Positions 26,701 to 57,901 of a stretch of 64,000 nt of DNA are shown piece after piece (position 1 is the first letter of the stretch; each line of letters opens with the position of its first letter). Location of the stretch: IMG/VR virus record IMGVR_UViG_3300032307_000369, positions 62,001 through 126,000 of that record; one strand, 5' to 3'. The notes beneath the pieces are model-generated. The model worked only from the letters and a program-made list of their open reading frames with translations. It did no database searches and was not told the DNA's origin. A program made the position numbers and the translations under genes.

Positions 26701-27171
26701 AAAATAGATGGCAATGCTGTTACACAAACTGTTAATGGTAGTGATTTAAATCTAGTCCCTGGAGATTTAGGTGGTTCTGTTGTAGTAAGTGGTAGTGATT
26801 TAAAACTAGTAAACAGTAGACTATTCCTTAATGGTTCTGACACAATGGAGTTTCCACCTAATACATTAGAACAAAGTGTTACATTAGTTACTGCTACTAC
26901 GTTTATTAGAACTGCCAACTGGGTTGATGATTCAGCAGGACTAGCCTATGCTTCCATAGCTAACGGTACACCTGGACAAATTAAGACAATTATTATGGCT
27001 AGTCGTGGCACGTACGGTAATGCGCTAGACACAAGACCTAGATATTTGATATTAAGTGGTAACATTAATGGAGCCACTAGAACTGTAAACATTGCCGCTT
27101 CTGATCCTAACGGTTCAACAACGTTCTTGTTTTTGAACAACAGTTGGTGGCGAATTGCTCATGTGGCGTAA
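23755..27171 (+). CDS. tail fibre/baseplate protein (1138 aa)
   Basis: same NDGTGD N-terminus; P.LGGNLDLNG, L.DVP.SY, GNASTATALQTARTING, DAASKKYVD. Confidence 0.8.
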   Translation: MSIQYINIGSNANDGTGDDLRTAFLKVNDNFQLLATIGGETNIGANLGGGGGQVYAGKTNETLNFRTIAGDVNSGITVNQSGNVITIASNFSVPASITTLISEDNSGQFTTTSPGATFRFNGTGGVTTSLNANILTIDGQFALVQDTLPLLGGNLDLNGSNITGLGNISIVGNITSDNLTVGRIVTPGVFPATATINGSLTVRGSTSLQAVTATSIVTNNIITAPGFTATSGAFTGNLTGNSTGTHYGNVALKVVDPLDPNYPEIVIVDSDTQTITGSHFGTFSGGLTGSLITGGLALDGNSITGEGRIEVTGSEVQTGTMAFTVNGRFHGGDSPAGVAPEADQGPESAMFTMTQQVYGFSEPIRLRTVSKNGSNSIPLGPGIRFESVNEIDPSDPTTYDPLNPPTQPEYVLHGYLGVLNYDNGADTNPDISAFVARVRSDDGDFVRDIIIARGDNRVSISGLDIEDSKISPKYDEIASGVFGITPSDLIITNGASNHYINFYGEYDPNFQDEGFATGPGYTGYSFPKVIGAPGEVLTVQLGTNLLTWATPGGGGGGGGTTLLNLTDVPDSYATHAGKLLRVKSTSDGIEFTNSFNATVTGSLIGNASTATALQTARTINGFTFDGTQDVTIDTRQIEELRQVASNANIVGSGGSIVSTINITTLESNLDVNFGEPSTNQGARKFRVGMDIKGTQISNPVITNISLTGGTFPTPNNDRTVVITVTFDAQVVNAESNITITGEVQNQWFNDEKVRSVFSVSPGSALSYTSSLGLFALNDSVSNVNNTLVRRNGSGQVFLGTAYVSTLTKNSADTEITVTSPISTNSSITSSANITTTGSVIAGFITLTGTGNQTISSSAGTNIILQPGTSVDLSGKKITNLSIAAPTADSDAASKKYVDDEIQGLFEETFQELPVSGDTGGTLNVQRSAIFTVAGSSNISTSTTGTGVQINLKNTISGVSVSGNLPVTGNVTSSGGFIKGGNVKIDGNAVTQTVNGSDLNLVPGDLGGSVVVSGSDLKLVNSRLFLNGSDTMEFPPNTLEQSVTLVTATTFIRTANWVDDSAGLAYASIANGTPGQIKTIIMASRGTYGNALDTRPRYLILSGNINGATRTVNIAASDPNGSTTFLFLNNSWWRIAHVA

Positions 27172-27174
27172 AAT

Positions 27175-43005: not shown

Positions 43006-43518
43006 ATGGAAAAACTTGTATTTCATCCAGATCCAATTTTAGAAGAACAAATGCCAGCATTTGATTTTGACAATCCTATTATGGATCCTAAAGAATTAGA
43101 AAAAGAACTATTAGCAATTATGTTTGCCAACAATGGCATTGGTCTTGCAAGTCCACAGATTGGCATAAGAACTAGAGTATTTGCAATGGGGCATTCACTT
43201 ATGCCAGAAGCAAGTCTTGCAATGTTTAACCCAACTGTAATTGATGCTAGCAATGAATTTCAAGATATAGAAGAAGGATGTTTGAGTTTTCCAAATATTT
43301 TTGCTAAAATTAAAAGACCTACTTGGATTGTAGTAAAATACAATACTAGTGATAATGAAGAACGAACAGAACGAATGGAGGGTTACAACTGTAAATGTTT
43401 TTTACATGAATTGGACCACTTAGATGGTATTGTAATGAAAGATCGTTTAAGTCAACTTAAATGGGCACTAGCCGTTAAAAAATCAAAAAAGGTAAAAAAT
43501 TATGTTAGAACCAAATGA
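43006..43518 (+). CDS. def: peptide deformylase
   Basis: GIGLASPQ, EGCLS, HELDH. Confidence 0.95.
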   Translation: MEKLVFHPDPILEEQMPAFDFDNPIMDPKELEKELLAIMFANNGIGLASPQIGIRTRVFAMGHSLMPEASLAMFNPTVIDASNEFQDIEEGCLSFPNIFAKIKRPTWIVVKYNTSDNEERTERMEGYNCKCFLHELDHLDGIVMKDRLSQLKWALAVKKSKKVKNYVRTK

Positions 43519-45784
43519 AGATCTAGAAAAGATCTTTGAACGTGCAATTCAATTATCTTTGGATAACCACCACCAATATATTACTTTAGAACATTTCTTA
43601 TATTGCATGGTTACTGACGAGTCATTTAACAGTGTACTTGTGGGTTATGGCACTGATGTTGAAGATTTAACTGCTAAGTTAGAAAACTATATTAAAAACG
43701 AGCTTGTTAGTATTGTTGATCAAACTTCAAATTCTAGACCAAAGAAAACTAATAGTGTTGAACGTATGCTTAATAGAGCATTTACGCACACACTGTTCTC
43801 TGGAAGAACAACCATTGAACCAATTGATTGCTTTTTAAGCATTTTAAATGAAAAGAAAAGTCATGCGGCATTTTATCTTCGCAGTGCTAATATTGAGAAG
43901 GACAAATTTATTGAGTATGTCAATAAAGAAATTGGCACAAGTAATCAAGACGGCGAAGAAGCCACAGTTCCAGAAAATAAACTTGAAGCATATATTGGCA
44001 ACTTCTGCACAAACCTAAATGCCAAGGTTAAAAATAAAGAGATTGATCCAGTTATTGGCAGGGACAAGGAACTGGAAGAAATGCAATTGGTACTTGCACG
44101 TAGACACAAGTCAAACGTAATGCTAATTGGTGATCCAGGTGTAGGTAAAACAGCTCTTGCTGAAGGTCTTGCACGTAAAATTGTTGAAGGTAACGTTCCT
44201 AAATTTATTCAAGATCACACAGTTTACACTTTAGACATTGGTGCTTTGTTAGCTGGTTCTAAATATCGTGGAGATTTTGAAGAGCGTCTTAAAAATGTTC
44301 TTACAGCTATCCAGAAAAAGAAAAAGTGCATTTTGTTTATTGACGAAGCACACATGATGAATGGTGCAGGAACAAGCAGTGGACAAAGTAATGACATGGC
44401 TAACATGTTAAAACCTGCACTTGCTAAAGGCGGACTAAAAGTTATCGCTAGCACTACATGGGAAGAATTCCGTAAGCACTTTGAAAAGGATCGTGCGCTA
44501 ATGCGTCGATTCCAACGTGTTATGGTTGGTGAGCCCGATGAAGTAACAACGATTAAGATTATCAAAGGTCTTAAAAAGTATTACGAAAAACATCATGGAT
44601 GCAAAATTACTAATCAAGCAATTATTGATTCTGTAAAATACAGTGTTAAGTACATGAGTGATAAAAAATTGCCTGATAAAGCAATTGATATTATTGACTG
44701 TGCTTGTGCTCGTTTCAAAGTACGTGATGAAGAAGGCGGCACAGTTGACCACGATGAAGTTGTATTCGAAGTCGCTAAAATGACTGGATTACCTTTAGAA
44801 CAAGTGGCTGCTAAGGATACAACAGTATTGCATGATTTAGAAGGCGATATTAAATCTGAAGTATATGGTCAGGACACTGCTGTAGATTCATTACTTGATA
44901 AAATTTATATTGCACAAGCAGGTCTTAAGAGCCATAATAAACCAATTGGTAGCTTCTTGTTTGTTGGTCCAACTGGATGTGGCAAGACTGAAACTGCTAA
45001 AGTATTGGCAAATAAGATGGGCATTAAGATGCTACGTTTTGACATGAGCGAGTTCCAAGAAAAACACTCAGTTGCTAAATTTATTGGTGCTCCTCCAGGC
45101 TACGTAGGTTTTGAAGACAATGCTGGACAATTGATTACACAGCTTCAAGAAAATCCTAACTGTATTCTATTGTTAGATGAAATTGAAAAAGCTCACCCAG
45201 ATGTTAGCAATGTTATGTTGCAACTTATGGACAACGGGTTTGTAACTGGCAGTAATGGCAAAAAAGCAGATGCACGTAATGTTATTATCATTATGACATC
45301 TAATTTAGGTGCTTCTGATAGTGAAAAATCTAATATAGGTTTTGGCAGTCAAGAAAAATTAGGAGAGATTAATAACGCTGTTAATAGATTCTTTGCTCCT
45401 GAATTCCGTAATCGTCTAGACGGTATTATTACATTTAAGAAACTTGAACACAGTGTAATGACAAAGGTAGTTGACAAGTTCATTAAAGAAATGAATTCGT
45501 TAATCACTGACAAGAATGTGTTTGTACAGCTAACTGAAACTGCTAAAAATCATCTTATTGACAAAGGGTTTGATAGCAAAATGGGTGCTAGACCAATGCA
45601 ACGTGTTATTGATGACGGTATTAAAAAGCCATTAAGCAGACAAATACTGTTTGGTAAGCTAGTAAATGGTGGCTTGGTCAAAGTTGACTTTGTTGATAAC
45701 CAACTAGTTTTTGATTATTTTGACCCTCTGCCAATTGTAAAAGATGTTGAAGCAAGTGCGGAAGAGAATGCAACACAAGATTAA
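43502..45784 (+). CDS. clpA: ClpA-type AAA+ unfoldase
   Basis: Clp N-domain, GDPGVGKT, KYRGDFE, GPTGCGKT, PPGYVG, IGF loop, no M-domain. Confidence 0.93.
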   Translation: MLEPNEDLEKIFERAIQLSLDNHHQYITLEHFLYCMVTDESFNSVLVGYGTDVEDLTAKLENYIKNELVSIVDQTSNSRPKKTNSVERMLNRAFTHTLFSGRTTIEPIDCFLSILNEKKSHAAFYLRSANIEKDKFIEYVNKEIGTSNQDGEEATVPENKLEAYIGNFCTNLNAKVKNKEIDPVIGRDKELEEMQLVLARRHKSNVMLIGDPGVGKTALAEGLARKIVEGNVPKFIQDHTVYTLDIGALLAGSKYRGDFEERLKNVLTAIQKKKKCILFIDEAHMMNGAGTSSGQSNDMANMLKPALAKGGLKVIASTTWEEFRKHFEKDRALMRRFQRVMVGEPDEVTTIKIIKGLKKYYEKHHGCKITNQAIIDSVKYSVKYMSDKKLPDKAIDIIDCACARFKVRDEEGGTVDHDEVVFEVAKMTGLPLEQVAAKDTTVLHDLEGDIKSEVYGQDTAVDSLLDKIYIAQAGLKSHNKPIGSFLFVGPTGCGKTETAKVLANKMGIKMLRFDMSEFQEKHSVAKFIGAPPGYVGFEDNAGQLITQLQENPNCILLLDEIEKAHPDVSNVMLQLMDNGFVTGSNGKKADARNVIIIMTSNLGASDSEKSNIGFGSQEKLGEINNAVNRFFAPEFRNRLDGIITFKKLEHSVMTKVVDKFIKEMNSLITDKNVFVQLTETAKNHLIDKGFDSKMGARPMQRVIDDGIKKPLSRQILFGKLVNGGLVKVDFVDNQLVFDYFDPLPIVKDVEASAEENATQD

Positions 45785-46989: not shown

Positions 46990-47358
46990 ATGAAATTATT
47001 TGAATTTTTTAGTCAGAATACAACTGAGCCAGCAGAGAAGGAAAATGACGACCAAATGCGTAAGGACGTCATGGCATTCATACTCGATGATAATGACATC
47101 TATCGAGAGCATCTTCTCCCGCTAATACACAAGCACAACAAAAACATTAAAGATGAAGACTTGCGTAAAGATTACGTAAAAGTTGTTAACGACTGCTGCC
47201 TTCAATTTTATAAAGAAAAAGAATTAAAAACAGATCCAAATGATCTTTTCCCAAAGGCAATGAGGAATGAGATGGTAAAACAACTTATCAAGATCAATAA
47301 AGAAAATATTATCACTAAAAAGAAGAAAAAAGATGAAGATACGAGATCTGTTATTTGA
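46990..47358 (+). CDS. hypothetical protein with N-terminal tag (MKLFEFF)
   Basis: TAAATA at 46930; first gene of the tagged cluster. Confidence 0.65.
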   Translation: MKLFEFFSQNTTEPAEKENDDQMRKDVMAFILDDNDIYREHLLPLIHKHNKNIKDEDLRKDYVKVVNDCCLQFYKEKELKTDPNDLFPKAMRNEMVKQLIKINKENIITKKKKKDEDTRSVI

Positions 47359-47719
47359 GGGCAGGATTGATCCTTCTCTTTTAAATCAATTCCTAAAACA
47401 TTGCTCTGAAGAATTAGGTCTTGAATCGTTACCTAAAATTAATCTTATAGATAATAAAGAGTATTCAATTACACATAAGTCATTTGGCGGGTACAGCCCA
47501 GATGAAAAATCAATAATACTTGCTACTGAAGGTAGACACCCAGTTGATGTGTTTAGAACGCTTGCACATGAACTAACACATTACAAACAAGACTTAGATG
47601 GACAACTTGAAGGCGACGATGTGGGTGCCACTGGTAGTCCACAAGAAAATGAAGCTAACTCTGTTGCTGGTATAATAATGCGAAATTTTGGTCAGAAGTT
47701 TCCAGAAGTATTTGAATAA
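47333..47719 (+). CDS. zincin-like metallopeptidase with N-terminal tag (MKIRDLLFE)
   Basis: RTLAHELTHYKQ...ENEAN. Confidence 0.7.
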   Translation: MKIRDLLFEGRIDPSLLNQFLKHCSEELGLESLPKINLIDNKEYSITHKSFGGYSPDEKSIILATEGRHPVDVFRTLAHELTHYKQDLDGQLEGDDVGATGSPQENEANSVAGIIMRNFGQKFPEVFE

Positions 47720-47727
47720 GGACCAAT

Positions 47728-48744
47728 ATGCGTATTAGAGATCTATTTGAAGGCGGGTGGGACACTACCAAAACACAAAATACTGTTTTACATCCTAAAA
47801 TTGTAAGTGTTGCTCTGTCTGTAGTAGATCAATTTGTTATTGACTTTAATAATTTTATTAAAAATAAAAACATTGGTCAAATTAAACGTGGCAGACCAAC
47901 AGGCAGTAGTGCATATCACGAACAAGATGCTATCGAAAAGCCTGAAACAATTTACGGCGACATAGACTTGCAAATGATTGCTCCACCAGTTGAAGGGTTA
48001 ACTTACGGGCAGTTTAGTGGTTATTGGAATAAGTTAGCAGATGATTTTGTTAAAACAGCTAATCCAACTTATGTAGACACAGCAGACAGCAAGCCAGGTC
48101 ATCCAATTTTTCAAGTTGGTAAACAAGACTATGTACAAGTTGATTTTATGTGGCATGAACAAAAAATGGCAGACTGGGGAGCAACTCGTGTAACTCCAGA
48201 ACGTGGTGTCAAAGGATTATTGTCAGGTAACATGTACAGTGTGTTTGGCGAAATACTTGATATGAGCATACAACATGCTGGCGTACAACTTAAAGTGATT
48301 GATGATCAGCGTGTACCATTTAGTAAACAAAAAGATACGCAGACTATTACAGTAACAACAAATCCAAAAACATTTATACTAGATGTTTTCATGTATTTGG
48401 CAAAACGTATGGGTGTAAACAATCCAAAGATTGATCCTATGCTTAAACAGTTTTCAGGTAATGACATTAATGATGTTAAAATAAGCAAACTAGTTAATGG
48501 TATGAAAGGATTTGCCTCAAGTGCCGAAGCAAGCGGTATGTTTGGTAACGGGGATTTACAAAATTTCAACTCTGCTCAAGATTTTATGAATAAGTTTTGG
48601 CAACGTTACGAAGAAAAAGCACAAATTGACATTGCTGGCAAAAAGCGTGACAAAGCACAGACCCCAGACGCTATTGCACGTGCCAATGCAGACAGAGAAA
48701 AGATCCAAAAAGGTCTAGATATGGTTAAGGGATATTTCCAATGA
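47728..48744 (+). CDS. Pol-beta-fold nucleotidyltransferase-like protein with tag (MRIRDLFE)
   Basis: TGS...GDIDL...VQVDF. Confidence 0.65.
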   Translation: MRIRDLFEGGWDTTKTQNTVLHPKIVSVALSVVDQFVIDFNNFIKNKNIGQIKRGRPTGSSAYHEQDAIEKPETIYGDIDLQMIAPPVEGLTYGQFSGYWNKLADDFVKTANPTYVDTADSKPGHPIFQVGKQDYVQVDFMWHEQKMADWGATRVTPERGVKGLLSGNMYSVFGEILDMSIQHAGVQLKVIDDQRVPFSKQKDTQTITVTTNPKTFILDVFMYLAKRMGVNNPKIDPMLKQFSGNDINDVKISKLVNGMKGFASSAEASGMFGNGDLQNFNSAQDFMNKFWQRYEEKAQIDIAGKKRDKAQTPDAIARANADREKIQKGLDMVKGYFQ

Positions 48745-49118
48745 GAGCAAAAGAATTTATTACTGAACTTAAAGCGCCAACAATAACCAACAGACAAGGT
48801 AAGTCAACCACTGCAATACATCTTTACACTGATGCTGAAAGACGCAATAGTGATTATGTGTCATATCGTTTAGGTATGGCTGTGGCGTGTACTGATGGAA
48901 CGAACGATCCAGACATGGATGGCAAAAGTTGGGTAGACAAGAGTAAAACAACACATCCATATACTTCTCAAGAACAAGAGATGTTAAAGAAAGCCTATAA
49001 GGTTGTAGGTGCAAAATATACAGATTTGACCAAAGGTGATATGAGAAGTCAAGAACTGAATACTACTAACGTTGTTAGTCCTGTTGCTAAACCCAAACGA
49101 AACAAATACGGCGTGTAA
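48741..49118 (+). CDS. hypothetical protein with tag (MRAKEFITE)
   Basis: ATGA coupling. Confidence 0.65.
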   Translation: MRAKEFITELKAPTITNRQGKSTTAIHLYTDAERRNSDYVSYRLGMAVACTDGTNDPDMDGKSWVDKSKTTHPYTSQEQEMLKKAYKVVGAKYTDLTKGDMRSQELNTTNVVSPVAKPKRNKYGV

Positions 49119-49130
49119 CGAGAGTTAAAA

Positions 49131-49970
49131 ATGAAAATATTTGAACTGTTAATTGAAAGTGGTAAACGACTTGCTAGTCAAGGAGTTGAAGTCTCTAGAG
49201 TAAACAAAGAAGACTTCAATGCCGCTAAAAATGTTTTAAATCCTATTCTAATCAAAGCAGGAATTAAAGCAGGATGGACTGCTGGCGGAGCTGGTAGTTT
49301 TGATCCAGAGCATGATTATGGTGGCGGTGGTAGAGAGGACAGTGGTGATATTGATATTATGATTGATCCAACTGACTTGGTAAAACAATTTCCTCCTAAT
49401 GTTGAAGCATATAACGCCGCAAGTAAAAAACCAATTGGTCCAAAAGCAATGGCATCAGCCATGGCGGATCCTGCTAAAAAAGCAAAAATTGAGATGAGTG
49501 CAAGTAAATGGGCACTTGCAACTTATATGTCAAAGAACGGATTTATAACTGACCCAGGAACGTTAACTGTTGAATACACTGCTGGTGGACAAAGTTTCTC
49601 AGTTGATTTAATTATACGTCCACGTAATGCATGGCCGTTGCACACACATGATTTTGTAACTGACCCAAAAATGCGTGGTGGCGATTTATGGACACAGATG
49701 TATCCAGTACTTGCTAAACTTGCAAGCCAAAAAACATTTGTTGATCCAAAAACAGGCGAAGAAAAAGGCAACCTACAATTCAGCCCAGACAGAGGATTGG
49801 TAGACAGAGATACTGATAAAGTCATTGCAATCAACAAAGATGACATTGCTAAAATATTGTTACACCCACAAGCAACAGCTAGAGATTTAGCAAGTATGAC
49901 AGGTATTAGAAATGCGTTGTCTAAACAGCCTGAAAAACTGTCAAAACTACCACAGCCACAAGAGCAATAA
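49131..49970 (+). CDS. Pol-beta-fold nucleotidyltransferase-like protein with tag (MKIFELLIE)
   Basis: AGS...SGDIDIMI...FSVDL. Confidence 0.65.
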   Translation: MKIFELLIESGKRLASQGVEVSRVNKEDFNAAKNVLNPILIKAGIKAGWTAGGAGSFDPEHDYGGGGREDSGDIDIMIDPTDLVKQFPPNVEAYNAASKKPIGPKAMASAMADPAKKAKIEMSASKWALATYMSKNGFITDPGTLTVEYTAGGQSFSVDLIIRPRNAWPLHTHDFVTDPKMRGGDLWTQMYPVLAKLASQKTFVDPKTGEEKGNLQFSPDRGLVDRDTDKVIAINKDDIAKILLHPQATARDLASMTGIRNALSKQPEKLSKLPQPQEQ

Positions 49971-49978
49971 ATACACTT

Positions 49979-52381
49979 ATGAATTTATTTGAACTGTTCT
50001 CACCCAATAAACAAATTATTATGGAAGGCATTGACCATCCAGAAGATCTCATTATCTCGCAAGGTAGTGCAGGTGCTGACAGGGTATTAAAAGATTTAGC
50101 AAGTTTAGAAAAAGATCCAAGTACAGTTACAGTTAAATGGGACGGCTTTCCAGCAGTAGTATTTGGTAGAGACAAAGGCGGAAACTTAGTGTTTATGGAT
50201 AAGCACATGTACGAAAAAGTATCTGCTGGCAAAATGGATTTTATGTCCATTAAAGATTATGATGAAAGTCGTGGAGCCAATCGTTCAAGTCTAATTGACC
50301 AAGAAAGTGTAATACGTCCGCTATTGAGCAAAATTGTTCCTAACGTTCGAGATCAATATTGGATGGGCGACTTAATGTGGACTGGCACCCCGCCAGTTAG
50401 TAATGGTGCATTTGTCTTTAAACCAAATACGGTTGAATATCAAGTTGACATAGATCAAAGTCCTGGAGTTGGCGATTCATTAAGCGACAAGATTGCTAGA
50501 AGCGGGGCAGGAATTGCAGTACATACTTTTATTCCAGGATTAGGACAACCTGATCAACCACTTGTTGGTCTTAAAGGATTACCAGAAGATGCTGGCATTA
50601 CTTTCCTAGTAGGAGAGATGAAGGACAAACCACGTGTTGCAATTAATTCAGAATTATTAAATCAAACGCAACAAATAATTAATGCAAATAGAAGTGCTGT
50701 GGATAAATTCTTTGTTGATCTAACTGCAATGAAAGGCAAGAGTGTTGTAACTGCCATGGGCCCTTTCATCACACGCATGTTAGAAGACAATGATATTAAA
50801 GGCAACATTGTTCCTAGATTCTTAGAATTTTTAGGAGAGCGTTTAACTGACAGTGCTAAACAAAAAATGTTAGGCACTAACAAAGATGGTTGGCTTTATC
50901 AAGAACAAGGCGGTGCTCCAGGACTACTTGGCATTTGGACCATGTGGGCCGCTATTACTGAATTAAAATTAAATATTAAACAACAAATTGATACGCAACA
51001 GCAAGGTAGTAAGATACGTGCTGTTACTGATGGAATTAACGCACATGAAGGTTATGTGTTTGGTGCTGGTAAAGACAAATTAAAACTAGTTGATAGATTA
51101 GGATTTAGCAGAGCAAACTTTGCTAAACATAAAGTTAGTGATGAAGAAGTGGCTGAAAAAAGTAAAATGCCGTTGGCAGTTTTTTGCTTTGGACGTATGA
51201 ATCCGCCAACAATGGGACACGGTCTTGTTTTAAATAAAACAATTGAACTTGGCAAACAAAATGCATTTATATTTTTAAGTAATAGTGTTGACCCTACAGA
51301 AAATCCTTTACAGCCATCAATAAAAGCAAAATTTGTTGAACAAATTTATCCTAATACCAAAGGACACATTGTTACAGAATTTGTCCAAAATCCAATATAC
51401 GCTGCCAACTGGTTATATGCTAAAGGCTATCGAAATATGGCATTTGTTGCTGGCAGTGATAGATTGGGTAAAGAAAAGGGCAGTATTGAAAAAATACTTA
51501 ACAGTTGGAATAGCGGTCCAGTTAGAAGTACCGATCCTGCTGGCGCTAGAGATTTCGTACAAATACAATACATAAGTGCAGGTGATAGGGATCCTGATAG
51601 TGAAGGAGTTTCAGGCTTCAGTGGATCTAAAGCACGTCAAGCAGTGACCGCAAATAACGAACAACAGTTTCAACAATATACTGGAATTGGTAATGATATC
51701 GTTGTTAATGGTAAAACACTATATCAGTCAGTTAGAGAAGGTATGGGTATAAAAGATCAAAAACCAACTGCTCCAGCCGTGCCTGCTAAACAACCTACTA
51801 TCAATGTACCAAATCAAAATGTCACTACTAAACAACCTGTTGAAAAGAAAGTTCCTGGACAAGCCCCAATGCAAAAAACAAATCAAGCAGACTTGGTTGA
51901 GAGTGTGCTAAGAGACAAAGAAGATTATTATGCCAAACGTAAGGCATTACAAGATATTCAATTGGATCCAAATACTGCTAAAGATGAAGAATTAAGAAAA
52001 GAACTTATTAGACGTAAACACGCTTTAGAACGTGAAGCCAAAAAGAAAGGTGTTATTGCTGAATCAATTATTAGATCAATTATTGATGAAGCACCAATCG
52101 AGATGGATCCACAAAATCCAAATGACCCAATGGTTATGCCACCTGGTCTTAATCCAGGAAAACTTAGCTATCGTAAACAACGTGCGGCTGCACAATTGGC
52201 AGATTTAGCTCGTATGGCTTCACAGGCAAATGAAAAGAATAGTGCTATAATGTGGGATAGCATTGTTAAACATTTTCCAGAGTTAGAAACAAACATTCGC
52301 AGTATACAACATGGCATGCAAGAATTAGAAAAAGTTAGACGTGCAGGCGGAAAACAAAGTAGAGGAATTGAAAAAATATGA
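49979..52381 (+). CDS. RNA-ligase-like domain + HIGH-type nucleotidyltransferase + small C-terminal modules, with tag (MNLFELF)
   Basis: KWDG, GDL, EGYV, KL(V)DR; FGRMNPPTMGH, AGSDR, SGSKAR. Confidence 0.7.
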   Translation: MNLFELFSPNKQIIMEGIDHPEDLIISQGSAGADRVLKDLASLEKDPSTVTVKWDGFPAVVFGRDKGGNLVFMDKHMYEKVSAGKMDFMSIKDYDESRGANRSSLIDQESVIRPLLSKIVPNVRDQYWMGDLMWTGTPPVSNGAFVFKPNTVEYQVDIDQSPGVGDSLSDKIARSGAGIAVHTFIPGLGQPDQPLVGLKGLPEDAGITFLVGEMKDKPRVAINSELLNQTQQIINANRSAVDKFFVDLTAMKGKSVVTAMGPFITRMLEDNDIKGNIVPRFLEFLGERLTDSAKQKMLGTNKDGWLYQEQGGAPGLLGIWTMWAAITELKLNIKQQIDTQQQGSKIRAVTDGINAHEGYVFGAGKDKLKLVDRLGFSRANFAKHKVSDEEVAEKSKMPLAVFCFGRMNPPTMGHGLVLNKTIELGKQNAFIFLSNSVDPTENPLQPSIKAKFVEQIYPNTKGHIVTEFVQNPIYAANWLYAKGYRNMAFVAGSDRLGKEKGSIEKILNSWNSGPVRSTDPAGARDFVQIQYISAGDRDPDSEGVSGFSGSKARQAVTANNEQQFQQYTGIGNDIVVNGKTLYQSVREGMGIKDQKPTAPAVPAKQPTINVPNQNVTTKQPVEKKVPGQAPMQKTNQADLVESVLRDKEDYYAKRKALQDIQLDPNTAKDEELRKELIRRKHALEREAKKKGVIAESIIRSIIDEAPIEMDPQNPNDPMVMPPGLNPGKLSYRKQRAAAQLADLARMASQANEKNSAIMWDSIVKHFPELETNIRSIQHGMQELEKVRRAGGKQSRGIEKI

Positions 52382-53205
52382 AAATTAAACAACTTTTAGA
52401 CGAAGCTAAAAAAGGTGTTAAAGCACCTAAGCATACAGTAAAGCCTAGAAACTTTGTTGCCAAAAATGCTATTGCTACTACTAGTGGAGCTGGCGCACAC
52501 AAAGATAAAAAGAAAGCTGAAAAGCAAGGCGATGTCAAACACAAGAAACAAGCTGTTCCCGTAGATGAACAGACTGTAGCAGAAGAGAAACAAAAAGGTG
52601 TTGATGGCAAAGCCTGCTGGAAAGGCTATAAGCGCATGGGCACTAAGAAGAAAGGTGGCAAGACTGTAGACAATTGTGTGCCAATGAATGAAAGTTTTGA
52701 TCCTGAATACGATGACGAAGCTGGAATGGCTGACAATAATCTTGAAACTCTAAAAAGAGCAGTAGAAGGCTTAGACGACATGATCAATGAAGGCGATAAC
52801 TTGCCTGAATGGTGTCAAGAAAAAATTGCAGTAGCAAAAAGCATGTTGATCTCAGTTTGGGACTACATGCAAAGTGAAGAAAACAGTATGTCTGAAAATC
52901 AAAGAAATCCTGATCTAATGAGTCAAAGTGATTATGACCGATATCAACAAGGTCAAATGGACCAACAAAAACGTGACTTTAAACGTGACGAAATGGAACA
53001 TGAACTTGGTCACGAAGAAAGAGGAATGTATTATGTTGTGATTGCTAAAAATGGCAAATGGGAACATACTAAAGCACAGCCAAGGCAAGAAGGTATGAAT
53101 GCCGCACAACGAATTATCAGTGCGTTACATGCAAAGTATCCAAGTATGCACTTGGGCATGGTAGGTCCTGATGGCAAAGTATATAATTATGGCAAGGGCA
53201 AATAA
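52378..53205 (+). CDS. modular/polyprotein-like protein with tag (MKIKQLLDE)
   Basis: unrelated short modules separated by hydrophobic-x-E sites. Confidence 0.65.
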   Translation: MKIKQLLDEAKKGVKAPKHTVKPRNFVAKNAIATTSGAGAHKDKKKAEKQGDVKHKKQAVPVDEQTVAEEKQKGVDGKACWKGYKRMGTKKKGGKTVDNCVPMNESFDPEYDDEAGMADNNLETLKRAVEGLDDMINEGDNLPEWCQEKIAVAKSMLISVWDYMQSEENSMSENQRNPDLMSQSDYDRYQQGQMDQQKRDFKRDEMEHELGHEERGMYYVVIAKNGKWEHTKAQPRQEGMNAAQRIISALHAKYPSMHLGMVGPDGKVYNYGKGK

Positions 53206-53206
53206 A

Positions 53207-53641
53207 ATGGATAAGTTACAGTTAGCATTAAAAACAGCATTTGCAAGTGAATACTCGTTTGCATTAAAAGCACAAAATTTTCACTGGAATGTGGAAGGCA
53301 TGTTCTTTACTCAATTTCATGATTTGTTTGGCGACATTTACAATGAAGTATATGGGAATATTGATGCGTTTGCAGAGAATATTAGAAAAGCAAAAGCATA
53401 TACCCCTGCAAGTTTAACACGTTTCAGTATGTTGAGTGTAATTCAAGATGAGACTGAAATGTTAGAGGCACCAGAAATGTGTGCAGAACTTTTATCTGAT
53501 TCTGATAAGATGGCAGAAATTCATAGATTAACTTTTCAATTATCTGAAGAAGCAGGTGAACATGGTCTTAGTGACTTTTTAGCAGGAAGACAAGATGCCT
53601 TCCGTAAACACTCTTGGATGTTAAGAGCCACATTGAAATGA
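53207..53641 (+). CDS. dps: Dps-family ferritin-like protein
   Basis: NFHWNVEG..F...H..F...Y, D..AE.IR, K..WML. Confidence 0.92.
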   Translation: MDKLQLALKTAFASEYSFALKAQNFHWNVEGMFFTQFHDLFGDIYNEVYGNIDAFAENIRKAKAYTPASLTRFSMLSVIQDETEMLEAPEMCAELLSDSDKMAEIHRLTFQLSEEAGEHGLSDFLAGRQDAFRKHSWMLRATLK

Positions 53642-54309
53642 AAATCAAAGAGCTATTAGAACAGAAACAAACTTCCAATGAGGATATTGGTAAAATAGCC
53701 AGTACCGTTGCGGATAAAGTGAGTGATGTTGCTAAGCCAGTTATAGATAAAGTAAGTGACTTTACTAAACCAGTTATAGATAAAGTAAGTGACTTTGCTA
53801 AACCAGTAGTGGACAAAGTAAAAGACGTTGCACGTCCTTATGTAGACAAACTTTCAACTAGTGTTAAAGACGTGCTGCCTAAAGATGTTGGAGATAAGGT
53901 TGTACATTATGCAGGTGATGGACATGACCATCCACCAAATATGCAATTTGCCAGCGACAAGTATAGAGAAAGAATGTCAAATTTAGATCCATCTTTTAAA
54001 GACGCACTCTATAGAGCGGCAAAAGATTCTGGTCTACCAATGCAGGTTACCAGTTCTCATAGATCTCAAGCAGAACAAGACGACTTATATAGACGATGGT
54101 TAAAAGGCGAACCTGGTATTTTTAAACCAAGTAAAAATGTTGGAAGCCATGGCGGGTTTGCTGTGGATATGAATGCAAAAGATGTTGCTAATTTACACGC
54201 ATGGTTAAAAAAGAACGACCCAGATGGTACCAAGTATGGACTACAAACTGGAATTGAATTTGGTGACCCTGTACATGTCCAATTACGAAATTTTAATAAA
54301 CGAGTATGA
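53638..54309 (+). CDS. M15-like Zn peptidase with tag (MKIKELLE) and 11-aa repeats
   Basis: TS..RS..EQ..LY, SH...AVD, DPVHVQ. Confidence 0.75.
   Translation: MKIKELLEQKQTSNEDIGKIASTVADKVSDVAKPVIDKVSDFTKPVIDKVSDFAKPVVDKVKDVARPYVDKLSTSVKDVLPKDVGDKVVHYAGDGHDHPPNMQFASDKYRERMSNLDPSFKDALYRAAKDSGLPMQVTSSHRSQAEQDDLYRRWLKGEPGIFKPSKNVGSHGGFAVDMNAKDVANLHAWLKKNDPDGTKYGLQTGIEFGDPVHVQLRNFNKRV
53713..53850 (+). repeat. 33-bp coding tandem repeat (about 4 copies)
   Basis: DKVSDVAKPVI / DKVSDFTKPVI / DKVSDFAKPVV / DKVKDVARPYV. Confidence 0.85.
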
Positions 54310-54599
54310 AACAGTATAAGATTACTACTGATAATATTGTCAATGACAGTCCAGACGATTGTTATATAGACCCTGCAGATCCTTTAAACGAAATAAAGGC
54401 TCTGCAATATCTTGGTGGTATCAATTCTCTAAATAGATTGCAAGAATATAAAGGCATGCAAGGTAGTAATATTAGCGCAACTGGTTCAGAAAAAGGAAGA
54501 TTACAAAGAGAACATAATATTAAACCTGGTACTCCTGAATGGTTTAAACTATGGTTTAGCTTACCTTATATGACTGGTGAGAGGCCTATTAAAAAATGA
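54306..54599 (+). CDS. hypothetical phage protein
   Basis: IKPGTPEWFKLWFS. Confidence 0.65.
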   Translation: MKQYKITTDNIVNDSPDDCYIDPADPLNEIKALQYLGGINSLNRLQEYKGMQGSNISATGSEKGRLQREHNIKPGTPEWFKLWFSLPYMTGERPIKK

Positions 54600-55729
54600 A
54601 AATAAGAGATTTATTAGAGTTATCAAAAACTAGTCCACTAGGCAGAGCACTTGACCAATTTAGTGGTTCAATTGACACTGAAAAAATTGGCAATCAAATA
54701 TCCAATGTGTTCAAACCAGACACAGTTGCTGATACTAATCGTTCAACCAATATCACTTCTGCTCCTGGTACGTCATCATCTAGTAAACCTGTTGCATCTG
54801 CGCCTAAGACAGACAACGTATTATCTGATGTAGAAAGTGAACTTGATAGACAAGGAATCACAGATCCATTTGTTAGAAAATCTATTCTAGCTAAAACTGG
54901 GCAAGAGTCAGGATCTAAATATAGAGTTACTGAAATTCCTTTCAAAAATACAAGTAATGATACTATTAGATTGCGATTACCACAACTACAAGGTATGAGT
55001 GATGAAGAACTCAATGCCTTAAAACAAGACAAAGTGGCGTTTTTTAACAGGGCATATGGATATAAAGGCAACACGTTAAACAATAACGAACCAGGTGATG
55101 GTTGGAAATATCGAGGTCGTGGTCTAACTGGTATCACTGGAAAAGTAAATTATCAAAGAGTTGACGATGCACTAGGGCTTAAGGGCGAGTTGGTTAAAAA
55201 TCCAGATCTATTGCTAGATCCTGAAATTGATAAAAAAGCATCTGTTTGGTACTACAAGGCAGCTGGTGCAAACAATGTAAAATTTGACAATCAAGAAGAT
55301 GCAAATAAATGGGCCATACACAAGGCTGGCGGGAACATGTATGCTCCTGGTACTAAATTAGGAAATATAGCACTAGATGACATGAACAAAAGGACTGCTG
55401 TAATTGCTACTACGGGAGCCGCAGTTTTAGCTGGTCCTACTTTATTAAATAAAGCAAAAGATATAATTGGAAACTTAAAAGGTACTGCTGGCAATGTAGT
55501 TAACACTGCAAAAAATGTTGGTGTAAGAACTGCTGCCACTGCCGCACTAGCAGGTAGTTTAGGTGGAGGTGGTGGGAGTGGTGGAGGATACTATACCAGT
55601 AGAACTTCTGAAGAACCAGAAATTGTCGTTATAATTAACGGCAAACGTAAAAAATTTAAAACTAAAGCAGAAGCATTGCAGGCAATTAAGTTAGCTAAAC
55701 AACAAGGATTGGAAGTGTCAAATGGGTAA
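54596..55729 (+). CDS. second GH19-like glycosidase with tag (MKIRDLLE)
   Basis: QESG, GDGWKYRGRG...ITGK.NY, NPDLL. Confidence 0.75.
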   Translation: MKIRDLLELSKTSPLGRALDQFSGSIDTEKIGNQISNVFKPDTVADTNRSTNITSAPGTSSSSKPVASAPKTDNVLSDVESELDRQGITDPFVRKSILAKTGQESGSKYRVTEIPFKNTSNDTIRLRLPQLQGMSDEELNALKQDKVAFFNRAYGYKGNTLNNNEPGDGWKYRGRGLTGITGKVNYQRVDDALGLKGELVKNPDLLLDPEIDKKASVWYYKAAGANNVKFDNQEDANKWAIHKAGGNMYAPGTKLGNIALDDMNKRTAVIATTGAAVLAGPTLLNKAKDIIGNLKGTAGNVVNTAKNVGVRTAATAALAGSLGGGGGSGGGYYTSRTSEEPEIVVIINGKRKKFKTKAEALQAIKLAKQQGLEVSNG

Positions 55730-56330
55730 GCCAGAAGTTTATTTAGATATGGACGGAGTTATTGCAGACTTTTTTACAGAGTATGCTAAACTTGCGGGTA
55801 TTGAATCAGGAAACTATAGAGATATTCCCCCGGCTAAAACAGATCCTACATTAAACAAAATGATAGGTACTAACTTTTTTGCACGATTACCAAAATGCAG
55901 AAATGCAGATGCACTAGTAGACTTAATAGTAAAAACGTTTGGTAGTTTTAATATCTGTTCAAGTCCTTTGCGTGGTGATCATGATAACAGTGAAAAACAG
56001 AAAAAGATTTGGCTTAACAATAATCTAAAATATCAACCTAAAGATGTTGTAATTACGCCAAACAAAGCCAAATGGGCCAAGCAAAAAGATGGTACTCCAA
56101 ACATCCTAATTGATGACCGAGGGAGTAATATTAGTTCTTGGGAAGCCGCTGGAGGTATTGGTATCAAATATCAAGCAGACGAAGATAGCCTACAGGTGAT
56201 AGTGCAAGGAATTAAAAGAGCGTTTTCTGTCATAAAAGGCGAACAAGAGCATAATCCGCAACAATTAAAAAGTTTAGATCGTAGCAGTGGTAACTTAATT
56301 GCTACCAGTGGTGATAAAGACTCCCATTAA
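55722..56330 (+). CDS. HAD-family 5'(3')-nucleotidase
   Basis: YLDMDGVIADF, CSSP, K..W, LIDD. Confidence 0.85.
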   Translation: MGKPEVYLDMDGVIADFFTEYAKLAGIESGNYRDIPPAKTDPTLNKMIGTNFFARLPKCRNADALVDLIVKTFGSFNICSSPLRGDHDNSEKQKKIWLNNNLKYQPKDVVITPNKAKWAKQKDGTPNILIDDRGSNISSWEAAGGIGIKYQADEDSLQVIVQGIKRAFSVIKGEQEHNPQQLKSLDRSSGNLIATSGDKDSH

Positions 56331-56339
56331 GGACATATT

Positions 56340-56576
56340 ATGAAAATTCAAGAAATTATTACAGAAACTGCTACAGCTGGTTCAACAAGTGCTAGTAATA
56401 TTGCTAGTACTGGGAATAGTCCTCATGTTGCTGTTGGAAGTCCAGCAGTAATCAAACGTTGGGGTGGAAGTCCAGGAAAAATGGGCAAGAGCCCTAGTCC
56501 AACTAAAACAGAGCCACAGGATGCTGAAGATAACCCAGTGACCAATCCTAAAGTTGGCAACAACTTAATTTCTTAA
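56340..56576 (+). CDS. small low-complexity protein with tag (MKIQEIITE)
   Basis: AAGGA SD; E-TATAGSTSASNIA. Confidence 0.65.
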   Translation: MKIQEIITETATAGSTSASNIASTGNSPHVAVGSPAVIKRWGGSPGKMGKSPSPTKTEPQDAEDNPVTNPKVGNNLIS

Positions 56577-56599
56577 TAAATATAGTATTGGAGAACAAA

Positions 56600-57901
56600 A
56601 TGCCTTTTAAATCAGCTAAACAGAAAAAAACAATAGATGCGGCAGCACATAACCCTGCTTTTGCAAAGAAAGTGGGGATCAAAGTTAGCGATGCAAAGAA
56701 GATGTCAGCACACGGCAAAGGCCAAACTAAGTTTGATGAAGCAAAACTAGATGAATTATCTCCAAAAACATTAACTTCTTATAAAGATAAGGCACGTAGC
56801 CAAGTGCGAGCAAGTGCTGGCGCTAATCCTAATAACTCACACGTAGCAACTGATCCTAAAATTGCAAATCGTGCTCGTGGCGCAGTCAAGGCAGATAATC
56901 GTTTAAATGGGTTTGGTCCTGCTAAGAAAGTTAAGGAAGCGACTGATACAGTAGAAAAAGATGAAAAGGGCAATGTCAAATCATGGAAGCATGAGGGCGA
57001 CTGGAAGAAAACAAATAATAAAGAAGGACGAGGAAAAGTGACTAATTTAAGCGACAAGGCTCGTAGACAAACAGCAAAAATGAGCAAAGCTGAAACTGAA
57101 ATGGCTGAAGCATTTGAACAAGCATTAGAAGGTTCTGGATCTCCAACAGTTACACATGGTCCAAACAAAGGCAAAAAATGGAGTCCAGAAACTCCAGGCC
57201 CAACAAACCCAAGTTACAAGGGAATAGACAAAGGTATTCCTAGTCCACCAGATGGTGCAACTGCTCCACCTCCAGGATATAAACCTCCAAAGTCAATGAA
57301 AAAGGCAGAAGTGACTCCATCAGTAAGTACAGACGATTCTGCAATGGCAGAAGAACGTTCTTCAAAGAAGGTGATGAAAAAATTACGTGCCAAACACATG
57401 ATGGAATCAATTCGAGTATTAGGACAATTGATTGCTGAAGCTAAAAAGAGTGCAAAAAAGAAAAATAGCAAAGTTGAAGAAGACCCAAATGAAGGTAACG
57501 CATTTGGTAAAGCAGTAGCTGATGCTAAAAAAGATGGCATCCAAAAAGGTGAAAAAGTTAAAGTAGGTGGTAAAGAATACCCAGTTAAAGAAGCTGCCAA
57601 CGATAAATGCAATCATACTCCAAAAGGTAAAAAGTGCCCAGTACACGGTTTAAAAGAATGTGGCTCAATGTATGAAGGCAATGATGGTAATTTAGCCAAC
57701 AATGCTAAACCTTACGACAAAGTGACAAAGGGCGATGTAGTTGCTGGTAGATTAGGCAAAGACGAAATGGGTGGAAAATCCAAAAAGAAGAAAGTTAAAG
57801 AAGGATGGACCCATGATACACTAGCCGCTCAATTGTTTGAGAGTGGAGACGAGTATATGGTCGCACTACGAAACAAATTGGATAAACAGCTAAAAGGTTA
57901 A
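56600..57901 (+). CDS. basic polyprotein-like protein
   Basis: TAAATA at 56577, GGAG SD; Lys-rich modules separated by hydrophobic-x-E. Confidence 0.65.
   Translation: MPFKSAKQKKTIDAAAHNPAFAKKVGIKVSDAKKMSAHGKGQTKFDEAKLDELSPKTLTSYKDKARSQVRASAGANPNNSHVATDPKIANRARGAVKADNRLNGFGPAKKVKEATDTVEKDEKGNVKSWKHEGDWKKTNNKEGRGKVTNLSDKARRQTAKMSKAETEMAEAFEQALEGSGSPTVTHGPNKGKKWSPETPGPTNPSYKGIDKGIPSPPDGATAPPPGYKPPKSMKKAEVTPSVSTDDSAMAEERSSKKVMKKLRAKHMMESIRVLGQLIAEAKKSAKKKNSKVEEDPNEGNAFGKAVADAKKDGIQKGEKVKVGGKEYPVKEAANDKCNHTPKGKKCPVHGLKECGSMYEGNDGNLANNAKPYDKVTKGDVVAGRLGKDEMGGKSKKKKVKEGWTHDTLAAQLFESGDEYMVALRNKLDKQLKG

What the first reader, a model, noticed from the sequence alone, without database searches (positions are those of the whole stretch)
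52378..57901. Apparent polyproteins punctuated by prohead-protease-like h-x-E sites
Seen: the 56600 protein is a string of 25-60 aa basic modules joined at FDE/A, LDE/L, VKE/A (twice), MAE/A, ALE/G, MME/S, IAE/A, VEE/D, MYE/G, VKE/G and LFE/S. The 52378 protein has LDE/A, VDE/Q, VAE/E, MNE/S and MSE/N between unrelated modules. The tail of the 49979 protein has LVE/S, IAE/S and IDE/A. These sites match the end of the N-terminal tag. Inference: the head protease dices single ORFs into several mini-proteins (DNA-condensing peptides or small anti-defence effectors), so the cargo count exceeds the gene count.
Basis: partly seen in the sequence, partly recalled or inferred. Interest (0 to 1): 0.72.

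Follow-up and report, generated by a model that had tools for sequence, protein, structure and literature searches.

The report
Phage head-cargo polyproteins with protease-site joints
Three genes of an uncultured marine jumbo phage (T4-like head genes) encode chains of small conserved modules. The modules are joined at the motif that the phage's own head-maturation protease is expected to cut, so one gene probably yields several small head-packaged proteins, though cleavage itself has not been shown.

Summary

**Site counts**
- Counts exceed chance only in the 433-aa protein starting at 56600: 12 [LIVM]-x-E against 4.2-4.5 expected, P about 0.0003, and only in the -2 register.
- That protein ranks second of 228 ORFs in the genome, between the scaffold (first) and the prohead protease (third).
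- The 52378 protein is marginal. The tail of the 49979 protein is at chance.

**Comparative evidence, which is stronger**
- Thousands of metagenomic homologues carry the same modules in different orders and numbers.
- A Glu sits at a fixed offset before each module core in 70-100% of occurrences. P3 is usually hydrophobic and P2 is free.
- The same modules sit directly behind an N-terminal capsid-targeting-like tag (MKIxELLxE) in other phages.

**Supporting context**
- The genome encodes a T4 gp21-type (S77) protease.
- Folded tagged cargo is depleted of [LI]-x-E: 3 against 12.7 expected.

Best reading: these are head-cargo polyproteins cut by the prohead protease. Cleavage, packaging of the untagged 56600 protein and the modules' functions are inferred, not shown. 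I rate this a new variant of a known kind. It is testable in cultured cyanophages that carry family members.

The parts
56600..57901 (+). 433-aa untagged, lysine-rich, mostly disordered modular protein (K+R 90, D+E 56). The N-terminal module resembles DUF3008. The C-terminal module (GWTHD..LFE/..DEYM..L) is conserved across the family.
   Evidence: ORF and sites. Start codon and RBS. Enrichment of [LIVM]-x-E. Homologues (1176) and module shuffling. AF2 mean pLDDT 55.
52378..53205 (+). 275-aa tagged modular protein. Layout: tag 1-9; basic module 10-64 (weak DUF7230 match); CWxGY hairpin module 70-105; helical-hairpin module 106-173; alpha/beta module 174-275.
   Evidence: 5176 homologues with modules in different orders. 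AF2 model with sites in low-confidence linkers. The ortholog in a 340-kb relative lacks the two middle modules, with the junction at LAE/N.
49979..52381 (+). 800-aa tagged protein. Layout: tag 1-16; DUF6267 domain with a ligase-like KWDG motif; cytidylyltransferase-like domain; Pro/Gln/Lys-rich linker; then module A and module B.
51902..52063 (+). Module A of the 49979 tail (residues 642-695, LRDKED..AKRKALQD type), entered at LVE/S 641.
   Evidence: phmmer against 1.84 billion representatives and junction mapping. In P0303 and P0316 the module follows the N-terminal tag directly.
52091..52378 (+). Module B of the 49979 tail (residues 705-800, APIEMDP.. type), entered at IDE/A 704. In other phages it is usually the C-terminal domain of proteins of 99-1470 aa.
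   Evidence: Glu at P1 in 90 of 102 representatives. P3 is V/L/I in 97%, P2 is variable, P1' is Ala in 83%; stand-alone tag-plus-module-B proteins (P0255, P0302).
46990..56576 (+). Cluster of ten genes whose products start with the shared tag MK(I/L)x(D/E)(L/F)(L/F)xE. Gene starts: 46990, 47333, 47728, 48741, 49131, 49979, 52378, 53638, 54596, 56340.
   Evidence: With tags removed, the folded members are depleted of [LI]-x-E (3 vs 12.7, P 0.0007). Synteny is conserved in the 340-kb relative.
56738..56740 (+). Glu 47 codon (FDE/A). Junction supported by homologues that lack residues 48-113.
56936..56938 (+). Glu 113 codon (VKE/A). It is the other end of the 66-aa cassette. A DUF3008-type N-terminus joins here in P0011.
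57674..57676 (+). Glu 359 codon (MYE/G). Cassettes of 44-88 aa are inserted here in homologues. It is also the start of the GNDGNLANN module shared with cyanophages.
57800..57802 (+). Glu 401 codon (VKE/G). Cassettes of 42-117 aa are inserted here in homologues. Glu precedes the WTHD module in 98% of 56 occurrences.
57839..57841 (+). Glu 414 codon (LFE/S). A 70-72-aa insertion sits here in homologues.
52690..52692 (+). Glu 105 codon of the 52378 protein (MNE/S). It lies in the linker between the hairpin module and the helical module.
   Evidence: (Glu at the fixed offset in 79% of 99 occurrences).
52894..52896 (+). Glu 173 codon of the 52378 protein (MSE/N). It is the entry to the C-terminal module.
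   Evidence: (82% of 38 occurrences).
56576..56582 (+). ATAAATA (within AATAAATA) 18 nt upstream of ATG 56600. This resembles a late promoter of T4-like phages.
   Evidence: ten hits in the window, all on the + strand, against 27.5 expected, most just upstream of genes. Sequence. The promoter function is inferred.
47333..47719 (+). Tagged 128-aa protein with an HExxH motif (zincin-like). It is a possible alternative processing enzyme.
   Evidence: phrog_87 metallo-protease, E 4e-4. (Pfam DUF6782, below the family cut-off). Motif read.

Best explanation
The three ORFs are head-internal cargo polyproteins of a marine jumbo phage with T4-type head genes. The phage belongs to the group of PA5oct, RaK2 and Atu_ph07.

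Each ORF is a chain of autonomous mini-modules of about 25-100 aa. Every joint is a short linker ending in hydrophobic-x-Glu. That is the motif cut by T4-type (S77, gp21-like) prohead proteases, and it is also how the N-terminal capsid-targeting-like tag of the neighbouring genes ends.

Proposed mechanism:
1. The precursors are made late in infection.
2. They co-assemble with the scaffold core. The 52378 and 49979 proteins use the N-terminal tag. The untagged 56600 protein uses some other conserved part, perhaps its invariant C-terminal module.
3. Once the protease is activated inside the prohead, it removes the tags and cuts the joints.
4. This releases several small, mostly basic peptides or mini-domains that stay with the DNA and may be ejected with it.

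Shown here: the motif, its enrichment and register, the module architecture, the conserved Glu at module boundaries, the equivalence of tag ends and internal joints, the protease gene, and the depletion of sites in folded cargo.

Inferred: cleavage, head location, the fate and the function of the fragments.
For: 1. **Protease.** A Peptidase_S77 gene lies at genome 187791-188417. It matches the T4 gp21 structure 5JBL at E 1e-12, with His and Ser at the aligned EVDHP and SSRG positions. In T4, gp21 cuts after L/I-x-E, cuts core proteins into several fragments and removes the 10-residue targeting sequence (PMC9026906).
2. **Genome-wide ranking.** The [LIVM]-x-E excess ranks the scaffold first (26 vs 12.1), the 56600 protein second (12 vs 4.5) and the protease third, out of 228 ORFs. 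The excess holds under local shuffles and only in the -2 register.
3. **Depletion in folded cargo.** With tags removed, folded tagged cargo has 3 [LI]-x-E against 12.7 expected (P 0.0007). This is expected if these proteins meet such a protease.
4. **Module gain and loss at sites.** Anchored indel boundaries against the query fall within 2 residues of a site 16 times out of 34, against 5.7 expected (P 4e-5). Among all pairs, both ends of a cassette sit on sites in 11 of 133 events against a null of 0.5%.
5. **Fixed Glu before module cores.** For ten module cores, Glu occupies one fixed upstream offset in 70-100% of occurrences, whatever the neighbouring module. For module B, P1 is Glu in 90 of 102 representatives that are under 50% identical to each other, P3 is V/L/I in 97% and P2 is free.
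6. **Unbiased boundary test.** In an all-against-all comparison of 390 family proteins, similarity ends on Glu in 18.2% of boundaries against an 8.0% background. This is the highest ratio of any residue, and decoy motifs score 2.5-7 times lower per site.
7. **Tag ends equal internal joints.** The same modules follow the N-terminal tag directly in other phages and an internal h-x-E here. Stand-alone tag-plus-one-module proteins exist.
8. **Structure.** AF2 places the five listed sites of the 52378 protein in low-confidence linkers or at module ends. Three modules are predicted confidently: pLDDT 81-85 for the hairpin module and 90-95 for the other two.
9. **Context.** The genes sit in a syntenic late-looking cluster that is conserved in a 340-kb relative, while module content differs.
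Against: - There is no direct evidence of cleavage or of head location.
- The 56600 protein and all its close homologues lack the N-terminal tag, so its route into the prohead is unexplained.
- Its P3 residues are often V or M (8 of 12) rather than the L/I preferred by T4 gp21 and by this phage's scaffold (73% L/I). With L/I alone the excess is not significant (4 vs 1.8, P 0.08-0.10).
- Some junctions in homologues have T or P at P3, such as KTTE/G and VPKE/G.
- Site counts are at chance in the 49979 tail and not significant in the whole 52378 protein.
- A conserved h-x-E at the start of a module could be part of the module itself.
- Several h-x-E lie inside predicted helices or conserved cores (positions 269, 280 and 353 of the 56600 protein; FPE/L inside module B).
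- The indel events are not phylogenetically independent, so the P values are optimistic.
Confidence: 0.6

Rival explanations
1. Sacrificial core or propeptide material. The proteins are cut at these sites, but the fragments are waste that leaves the capsid to make room for DNA. This is what happens to T4 gp22, gp67 and gp68 and to the long multiply-cut propeptides of SPN3US. The gene would then add no lasting cargo.
For: In T4 most core fragments are removed from the head (PMC9026906). SPN3US propeptides are cut several times (PMC10052503). The 56600 protein shares its site excess with the scaffold and is largely disordered.
Against: Modules are conserved at 70-94% identity across unrelated contexts and distant phage groups, including cyanophages. 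Some fold as confident mini-domains. Some exist as stand-alone tagged genes. The 56600 protein is strongly basic, unlike the acidic coiled-coil scaffold, and basic fragments would tend to stay on DNA (inference).
Confidence: 0.2
2. Uncut beads-on-a-string proteins. The modules work within the full-length chain. The Glu-containing linkers are conserved because they are recombination joints or structural caps of the modules, not protease sites.
For: Cleavage is unproven. K-rich linkers such as KKKVKE recur and could promote recombination. The 56600 protein has no tag. V, M, T and P occur at P3, which is looser than the T4 motif.
Against: The joints differ in sequence (FDE, MYE, VKE, VNE, MNE, LDE, LFE, IDE) and share only the P3/P1 pattern with a free P2, so a single recombination sequence does not explain them. 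Internal joints are interchangeable with the ends of the N-terminal tags, which in T4 are cleavage sites. Folded tagged cargo avoids the motif.
Confidence: 0.13
3. Processing happens, but by another enzyme. The candidate is the tagged zincin-like HExxH protein encoded at 47333-47719, by analogy with the embedded metallopeptidase of polyvalent proteins.
For: A tagged putative metallopeptidase lies in the same cluster. Polyvalent proteins are thought to be released by an embedded zincin-like peptidase (PMC5512222).
Against: The joints match the Glu specificity of the S77 family and of this phage's own scaffold sites. The metallopeptidase assignment is weak (E 4e-4 in PHROGs, below the Pfam cut-off).
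Confidence: 0.04
4. Chance. h-x-E is a loose motif in Lys/Glu/Ala-rich proteins, and the apparent punctuation carries no meaning.
For: Counts are at expectation in the 49979 tail and not significant in the 52378 protein.
Against: See the 56600 statistics, the genome-wide ranking, the register control, and above all the conservation of Glu at module boundaries in hundreds of divergent homologues.
Confidence: 0.03

Closest known systems
T4 internal proteins (IPI, IPII, IPIII, Alt) with the capsid targeting sequence, matured by gp21
   Same: - A short N-terminal tag ends in L/I-x-E.
- A cluster of diverse cargo genes shares only the tag.
- The genome has a gp21-type S77 protease.
- Alt shows that C-terminal pieces can also be removed (PMC9026906).
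   Different: - T4 cargo is one mature protein per gene. Here one ORF holds up to about ten modules, each preceded by a site.
- The tag here is 8-9 residues with its own consensus.
- The 56600 protein has no tag.
T4 prohead core proteins gp22, gp67 and gp68, cut into many fragments
   Same: - Many L/I/V-x-E sites in one polypeptide.
- This phage's scaffold and the 56600 protein are the two most site-enriched ORFs of the genome.
   Different: - The scaffold is an acidic coiled coil with one conserved architecture.
- These proteins are basic mosaics of shuffled, individually conserved modules.
- They are encoded in the cargo cluster about 70 kb from the head-gene block.
Inner-body and ejection proteins of phiKZ, 201phi2-1 and SPN3US, cut at S/A-x-E by a diverged gp21 homologue
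   Same: - Many head proteins are cut after Glu.
- Long regions are cut several times (PMC9026906, PMC10052503).
   Different: - In those phages, apart from the protease's own self-cleavage, every mapped cut (SPN3US) releases an N-terminal propeptide from one mature protein.
- No cassette-like module shuffling with a site at each joint has been described there.
- The P3 preference differs.
Polyvalent proteins of phages and conjugative elements (Iyer et al. 2017, PMC5512222)
   Same: - Several unrelated functional units sit in one virion-delivered polypeptide.
- There is extensive mosaicism.
- Release into units by proteolysis is proposed.
   Different: - Polyvalent proteins are large and built of enzymatic domains, with an embedded zincin-like peptidase.
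- Here the modules are mostly mini-domains or peptides, no peptidase is embedded, and the joints fit the prohead protease acting in trans.
Adenovirus core protein precursors (pVII, pX/mu) cut by the viral protease into basic DNA-condensing peptides. This comparison comes from general knowledge and was not checked here.
   Same: Basic precursors are cut inside the capsid by the maturation protease, and the peptides stay on the genome.
   Different: The virus and the protease are unrelated, and each of those precursors yields one DNA-binding product. The comparison is a functional analogy only.

Membership tests
T4-type capsid-targeted (CTS) internal head proteins | An N-terminal tag of about 10 residues with hydrophobic targeting positions, ending in L/I-x-E | tested here: met
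   Met for the 52378 protein (tag ends LDE/A at 9) and the 49979 protein (LFE 5, IME/G 16), and for eight neighbouring genes. For the T4 rule see PMC9026906.
T4-type capsid-targeted (CTS) internal head proteins | The same tag on the 56600 protein | tested here: not met
   The protein starts MPFKSAKQ. No tag appears in it or in its 60 closest homologues.
T4-type capsid-targeted (CTS) internal head proteins | The genome encodes a gp21-type (Peptidase_S77) prohead protease next to the scaffold and major capsid genes | tested here: met
   PF03420 at 91 bits, above the cut-off. phrog_207 head maturation protease at E 6e-58. 5JBL match. Scaffold homologue. gp23-type capsid protein.
T4-type capsid-targeted (CTS) internal head proteins | Physical presence in proheads and removal of the tag in mature heads | not testable with these tools
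   This needs virion and prohead proteomics.
Multiply-cleaved substrates of an S77 prohead protease | An excess of hydrophobic-x-Glu over composition, in the correct register | tested here: met
   Met for the 56600 protein. Inconclusive for the 52378 protein (P 0.03 for residues 10-173 only). Not met by counts for the 49979 tail.
Multiply-cleaved substrates of an S77 prohead protease | Sites lie in accessible linkers and are conserved in homologues, with P2 free | tested here: met
   Exceptions: IAE/S 695 is not conserved (8 of 101), and sites at 269 and 280 of the 56600 protein lie in a predicted helix.
Polyvalent proteins (Iyer et al. 2017) | Two to fifteen distinct domains in one polypeptide of a phage, encoded near virion genes | tested here: inconclusive
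   The 49979 protein joins two nucleotidyltransferase-type domains to small modules. The other two proteins consist of mini-modules without known enzymatic domains.
Polyvalent proteins (Iyer et al. 2017) | An embedded zincin-like metallopeptidase for self-processing | tested here: not met
   Pfam and PHROGs find no peptidase domain in the three proteins. A separate tagged HExxH protein lies at 47333-47719.

The most novel reading that the evidence does not exclude
Marine T4-like and jumbo phages, including cultured cyanomyoviruses, may carry an undescribed class of virion cargo. These would be polyproteins assembled from a shared pool of autonomous mini-proteins that move between genes and phages as cassettes, each bringing its own prohead-protease site. 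The head protease would then act as a generic decoder that turns one ORF into up to ten packaged peptides. An N-terminal targeting tag on a single-module gene and an internal joint in a polyprotein would be two interchangeable ways of delivering the same unit.
Probability: 0.35. Interest if true: 0.8.

Novelty: new variant of a known kind. Interest (0 to 1): 0.62.

Why it matters
If the joints are cut, gene counts underestimate the protein cargo of these phage heads. It would also mean that a large family of metagenomic "hypothetical proteins" has a simple organising rule. At least 1176 and 5176 homologues were found for two of the proteins.

The rule gives a sequence-only way to split such proteins into functional units. 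It points to a cassette mode of evolution for head-delivered peptides. It also identifies candidate DNA-condensing or host-directed mini-proteins in ecologically important marine phages. Finally, it extends the T4 targeting-and-processing system, which is already used as a protein-delivery tool, to multi-product precursors.

Tried and rejected
- **DNA search for relatives.** Megablast of the region against 50,697 phage records found nothing. Only protein-level module hits to cyanophages appeared.
- **First indel analysis.** Pairwise global alignments with cheap gap extension were too noisy: 1112 mostly spurious events. I replaced them with anchored indels and an unbiased analysis of HSP ends.
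- **HSP ends against the query alone.** These were blurred by the K-rich linkers.
- **Fold search.** The 52378 model against the PDB gave no significant match (best E 0.075, weak RbcS-like resemblance of the C-terminal module). No function was assigned from it.
- **AF2 of the 56600 protein.** The protein is so disordered (47% of residues below pLDDT 50) that site position relative to disorder is not informative: 10 of 16 sites fall in such segments.
- **Family libraries.** Pfam and PHROGs gave no function for the modules, only DUF3008-like, DUF7230 and unnamed phrogs. The 49979 protein has no sequence relative in the PDB.
- **T4 late promoter.** TATAAATA is nearly absent (1 hit). The shorter ATAAATA fits better.
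- **Capsid-protein maturation site.** It could not be fixed. Alignment to mature T4 gp23 puts the T4 cut near residue 30 of this protein, between the candidate sites LLE 18 and LAE 41.
- **Literature.** Searches found no description of such polyproteins and no paper naming the DUF families.
- **Not run.** I left out complex prediction of the protease with a substrate peptide, because the output would not show which residue sits at the active site.

Full report
**Context**

The window is bases 62001-126000 of a 245,550-bp viral contig, with CheckV completeness about 70%. The phage has T4-type head genes outside the window:
- a Peptidase_S77 prohead protease at genome 187791-188417 (PF03420, 91 bits; phrog_207; T4 gp21 structure 5JBL at E 1e-12, with His and Ser at the aligned EVDHP and SSRG positions);
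- directly after it, a 364-aa scaffold homologue, 42% identical to a protein annotated as the scaffolding protein in jumbo phage MIJ3 and present across the PA5oct, RaK2 and Atu_ph07 group;
- then a gp23-type capsid protein.

The phage is therefore an uncultured marine relative of the RaK2-like jumbo phages. Related contigs reach 340-357 kb.

**The observation**

The 56600 protein starts at ATG 56600, behind a GGAG ribosome-binding site and an AATAAATA motif.

Ten adjacent + strand genes (46990 to 56576) start with a shared tag, MK(I/L)x(D/E)(L/F)(L/F)xE. Two more tagged ORFs lie elsewhere on the contig. In T4, the first 10 residues of the internal proteins target them to the prohead core. Residues 8 and 10 (L/I and Glu) direct removal by gp21, which cuts after L/I-x-E and chops core proteins into several pieces (PMC9026906). 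The tag reading is therefore well founded by homology of the system.

**Is it more than chance?**

| Protein | [LIVM]-x-E observed | Expected | P |
|---|---|---|---|
| 56600 protein | 12 | 4.2-4.7 | <= 0.0003 |
| 52378 protein, whole | 7 | about 4.5 | not significant |
| 52378 protein, residues 10-173 | 6 | 2.7 | 0.03 |
| 49979 tail | 4 | 3.8 | at chance |

- The 56600 result holds with global and with local shuffles. The excess exists only in the -2 register: 12 there against 2-6 at other offsets.
- Across 228 ORFs of the genome, the scaffold ranks first (26 vs 12.1, z 4.9), the 56600 protein second (z 4.0) and the protease third (z 3.1). This serves as an internal positive control.
- The folded tagged proteins, with tags removed, are depleted of [LI]-x-E: 3 against 12.7 expected, P 0.0007. 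That is what one expects of proteins that must survive such a protease.

The 56600 protein has 1176 homologues (among the 8000 candidates scored) and the 52378 protein 5176. Many share only 8-25% of the query, at 70-94% identity. Small modules are therefore reused in different proteins, including proteins of cultured cyanomyoviruses.

*Indels sit at the sites.*
- Relatives lack residues 48-113 of the 56600 protein exactly between FDE/ and VKE/.
- Cassettes of 42-117 aa are inserted after MYE/ 359, VKE/ 401 and LFE/ 414, and each brings its own terminal x-x-Glu.
- One module is tandemly duplicated in a relative.
- Anchored boundaries against the query fall within 2 residues of a site 16 times out of 34, against 5.7 expected (P 4e-5).
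- Among all pairs, both ends of a cassette sit on sites in 11 of 133 events, against a null of 0.5%.
- These events are not phylogenetically independent, so the P values are upper bounds on significance.

*A fixed Glu precedes each module.*
- For ten module cores, Glu sits at one fixed offset upstream in 70-100% of occurrences, whatever the upstream neighbour.
- For module B of the 49979 tail, P1 is Glu in 90 of 102 cluster representatives that are under 50% identical to each other. P3 is V/L/I in 97%, P2 is free and P1' is mostly Ala.

*An unbiased check agrees.* In an all-against-all comparison of 390 family proteins, similarity ends on Glu in 18.2% of boundaries against an 8.0% background. 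This is the highest ratio of any residue. Decoy motifs (h-x-D, h-x-K, h-x-Q) score 2.5-7 times lower per site.

*Tag ends and internal joints are interchangeable.*
- The basic KPRNFVAKN module follows the tag here but an internal VNE/ or VKE/ in P0187 and P0213.
- The CWxGY module follows VAE/ here but the tag itself in P0195.
- Modules A and B of the 49979 tail follow the tag directly in P0303, P0316 and P0255. They also exist as stand-alone tag-plus-one-module proteins of about 100 aa.
- In a syntenic 340-kb relative, the ortholog of the 52378 protein has only the first and last modules, joined at LAE/N.

*One listed site fails the test.* IAE/S 695 is not conserved (8 of 101).

**Structure**

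AF2 of the 52378 protein (mean pLDDT 70.6) gives:
- a disordered basic region, residues 1-75;
- a hairpin, 84-102;
- a helical hairpin, 114-174 (pLDDT about 95);
- an alpha/beta unit, 219-271 (pLDDT about 90).

The five listed sites lie in low-confidence linkers or at module ends. The three unlisted h-x-E lie inside the helical hairpin. The 56600 protein is mostly disordered (mean pLDDT 55), so its sites would be accessible, but the model does not discriminate between them.

**Explanation**

The best reading is that these are head-cargo polyproteins. Precursors enter the prohead core, and the S77 protease removes the tags and cuts the joints. Several small, mostly basic units remain: the 56600 protein has 90 K+R against 56 D+E.

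Steps shown:
- the motif, its excess and its register;
- the module architecture and the conserved Glu at boundaries;
- the equivalence of tag ends and internal joints;
- the protease gene;
- avoidance of the motif in folded cargo.

Steps inferred: cleavage, head location, the fate and the function of the fragments.

Weak points:
- The 56600 family has no tag. The most conserved parts of the family are its N-terminal and C-terminal modules, and either might mediate packaging, but that is speculation.
- Its P3 is V or M in 8 of 12 sites, whereas the scaffold uses L/I in 73%.
- Some joints in relatives have T or P at P3.

**Rivals**

- The fragments are disposable core material, as in T4 and SPN3US.
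- The chains are not cut, and the linkers are recombination joints.
- A tagged zincin-like protein at 47333-47719 does the cutting (compare PMC5512222).
- The pattern is chance.

Strong module conservation, stand-alone tagged modules, the varied joint sequences that share only P3 and P1, and the statistics argue against these to different degrees.

**Novelty**

Capsid targeting tags, Glu-specific prohead proteases, multiply-cut core proteins and polyvalent virion proteins are all known. I found no description of cargo polyproteins built from shuffled mini-modules with a prohead-protease site at every joint, and no paper on the DUF families involved. I rate it a new variant of a known kind.

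It can be tested in cultured cyanophages. S-BM1_00083 has 20 [LIVM]-x-E against 8.8 expected, and WH25-B XLM56203 has 18 against 10.1. Several neighbouring cyanophage proteins have tag-like N-termini, and these two start MYSNDL/MNLNDL with an early h-x-E.

Noticed in passing
window 56340-56576: This 78-aa tagged protein continues after its tag (ITE/) with TATAGSTSASNIAS. That closely matches the capsid protein just after its candidate maturation site (LAE/SATAGSTSAGNVAT): 11 of 20 identical, with the sites aligned. The same SATAG..GN(I/V)A module follows h-x-E in several homologues. It may mimic the capsid protein's N-terminal arm.
   Followed up: partly
window 43502-45784: A 760-aa ClpA/ClpB-like double AAA+ protein lies about 1.2 kb upstream of the tagged cargo cluster (two untagged ORFs between), and the same arrangement is kept in a 340-kb relative (L005). 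A review of jumbo phages suggested that such chaperones might translocate or unfold proteins during virion assembly (PMC7824862).
   Followed up: partly
window 49979-51739: The tagged 800-aa protein joins a DUF6267 domain with a ligase-like KWDG motif (and later EGYVF) to a cytidylyltransferase-like domain with an HxGH-type motif. In cyanophages the two parts are separate adjacent genes. A head-packaged nucleotidyltransferase pair of unknown role.
   Followed up: partly
window 53638-54309 and 54596-55729: Two tagged proteins look like peptidoglycan hydrolases. One is VanY-like, with a run of KVSDxxKPVxD repeats. The other is GH19/endolysin-like, with a Gly-rich C-terminal part. This suggests cell-wall enzymes delivered from the head.
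   Followed up: no
window 47333-47719: A tagged 128-aa protein carries an HExxH motif (weak metallopeptidase matches). It could be a packaged zincin-like peptidase.
   Followed up: partly
window, whole (for example 46929, 49967, 56576, 58610): ATAAATA occurs only 10 times against 27.5 expected, always on the + strand and mostly just upstream of gene starts. The full T4 late-promoter octamer TATAAATA occurs once against 7.3 expected. This suggests a late promoter like that of T4-like cyanophages, with strong avoidance elsewhere.
   Followed up: partly
window 53171-53641 and 55722-56330: Two untagged genes are interleaved with the tagged cargo genes: a Dps/ferritin-like protein and a 5'-deoxyribonucleotidase-like protein. 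Both are conserved in the 340-kb relative.
   Followed up: no
window 15153-31416: Three very large consecutive + strand ORFs (2854, 1138 and 1413 aa) were not examined. They are probably structural or fibre proteins.
   Followed up: no
genome 186903-187775 (outside the window; L007 104-976): A 290-aa extremely acidic protein with four h-x-E sites near its N-terminus lies between the portal gene and the protease. No PHROG match. It may be a gp67/gp68-like core protein.
   Followed up: no
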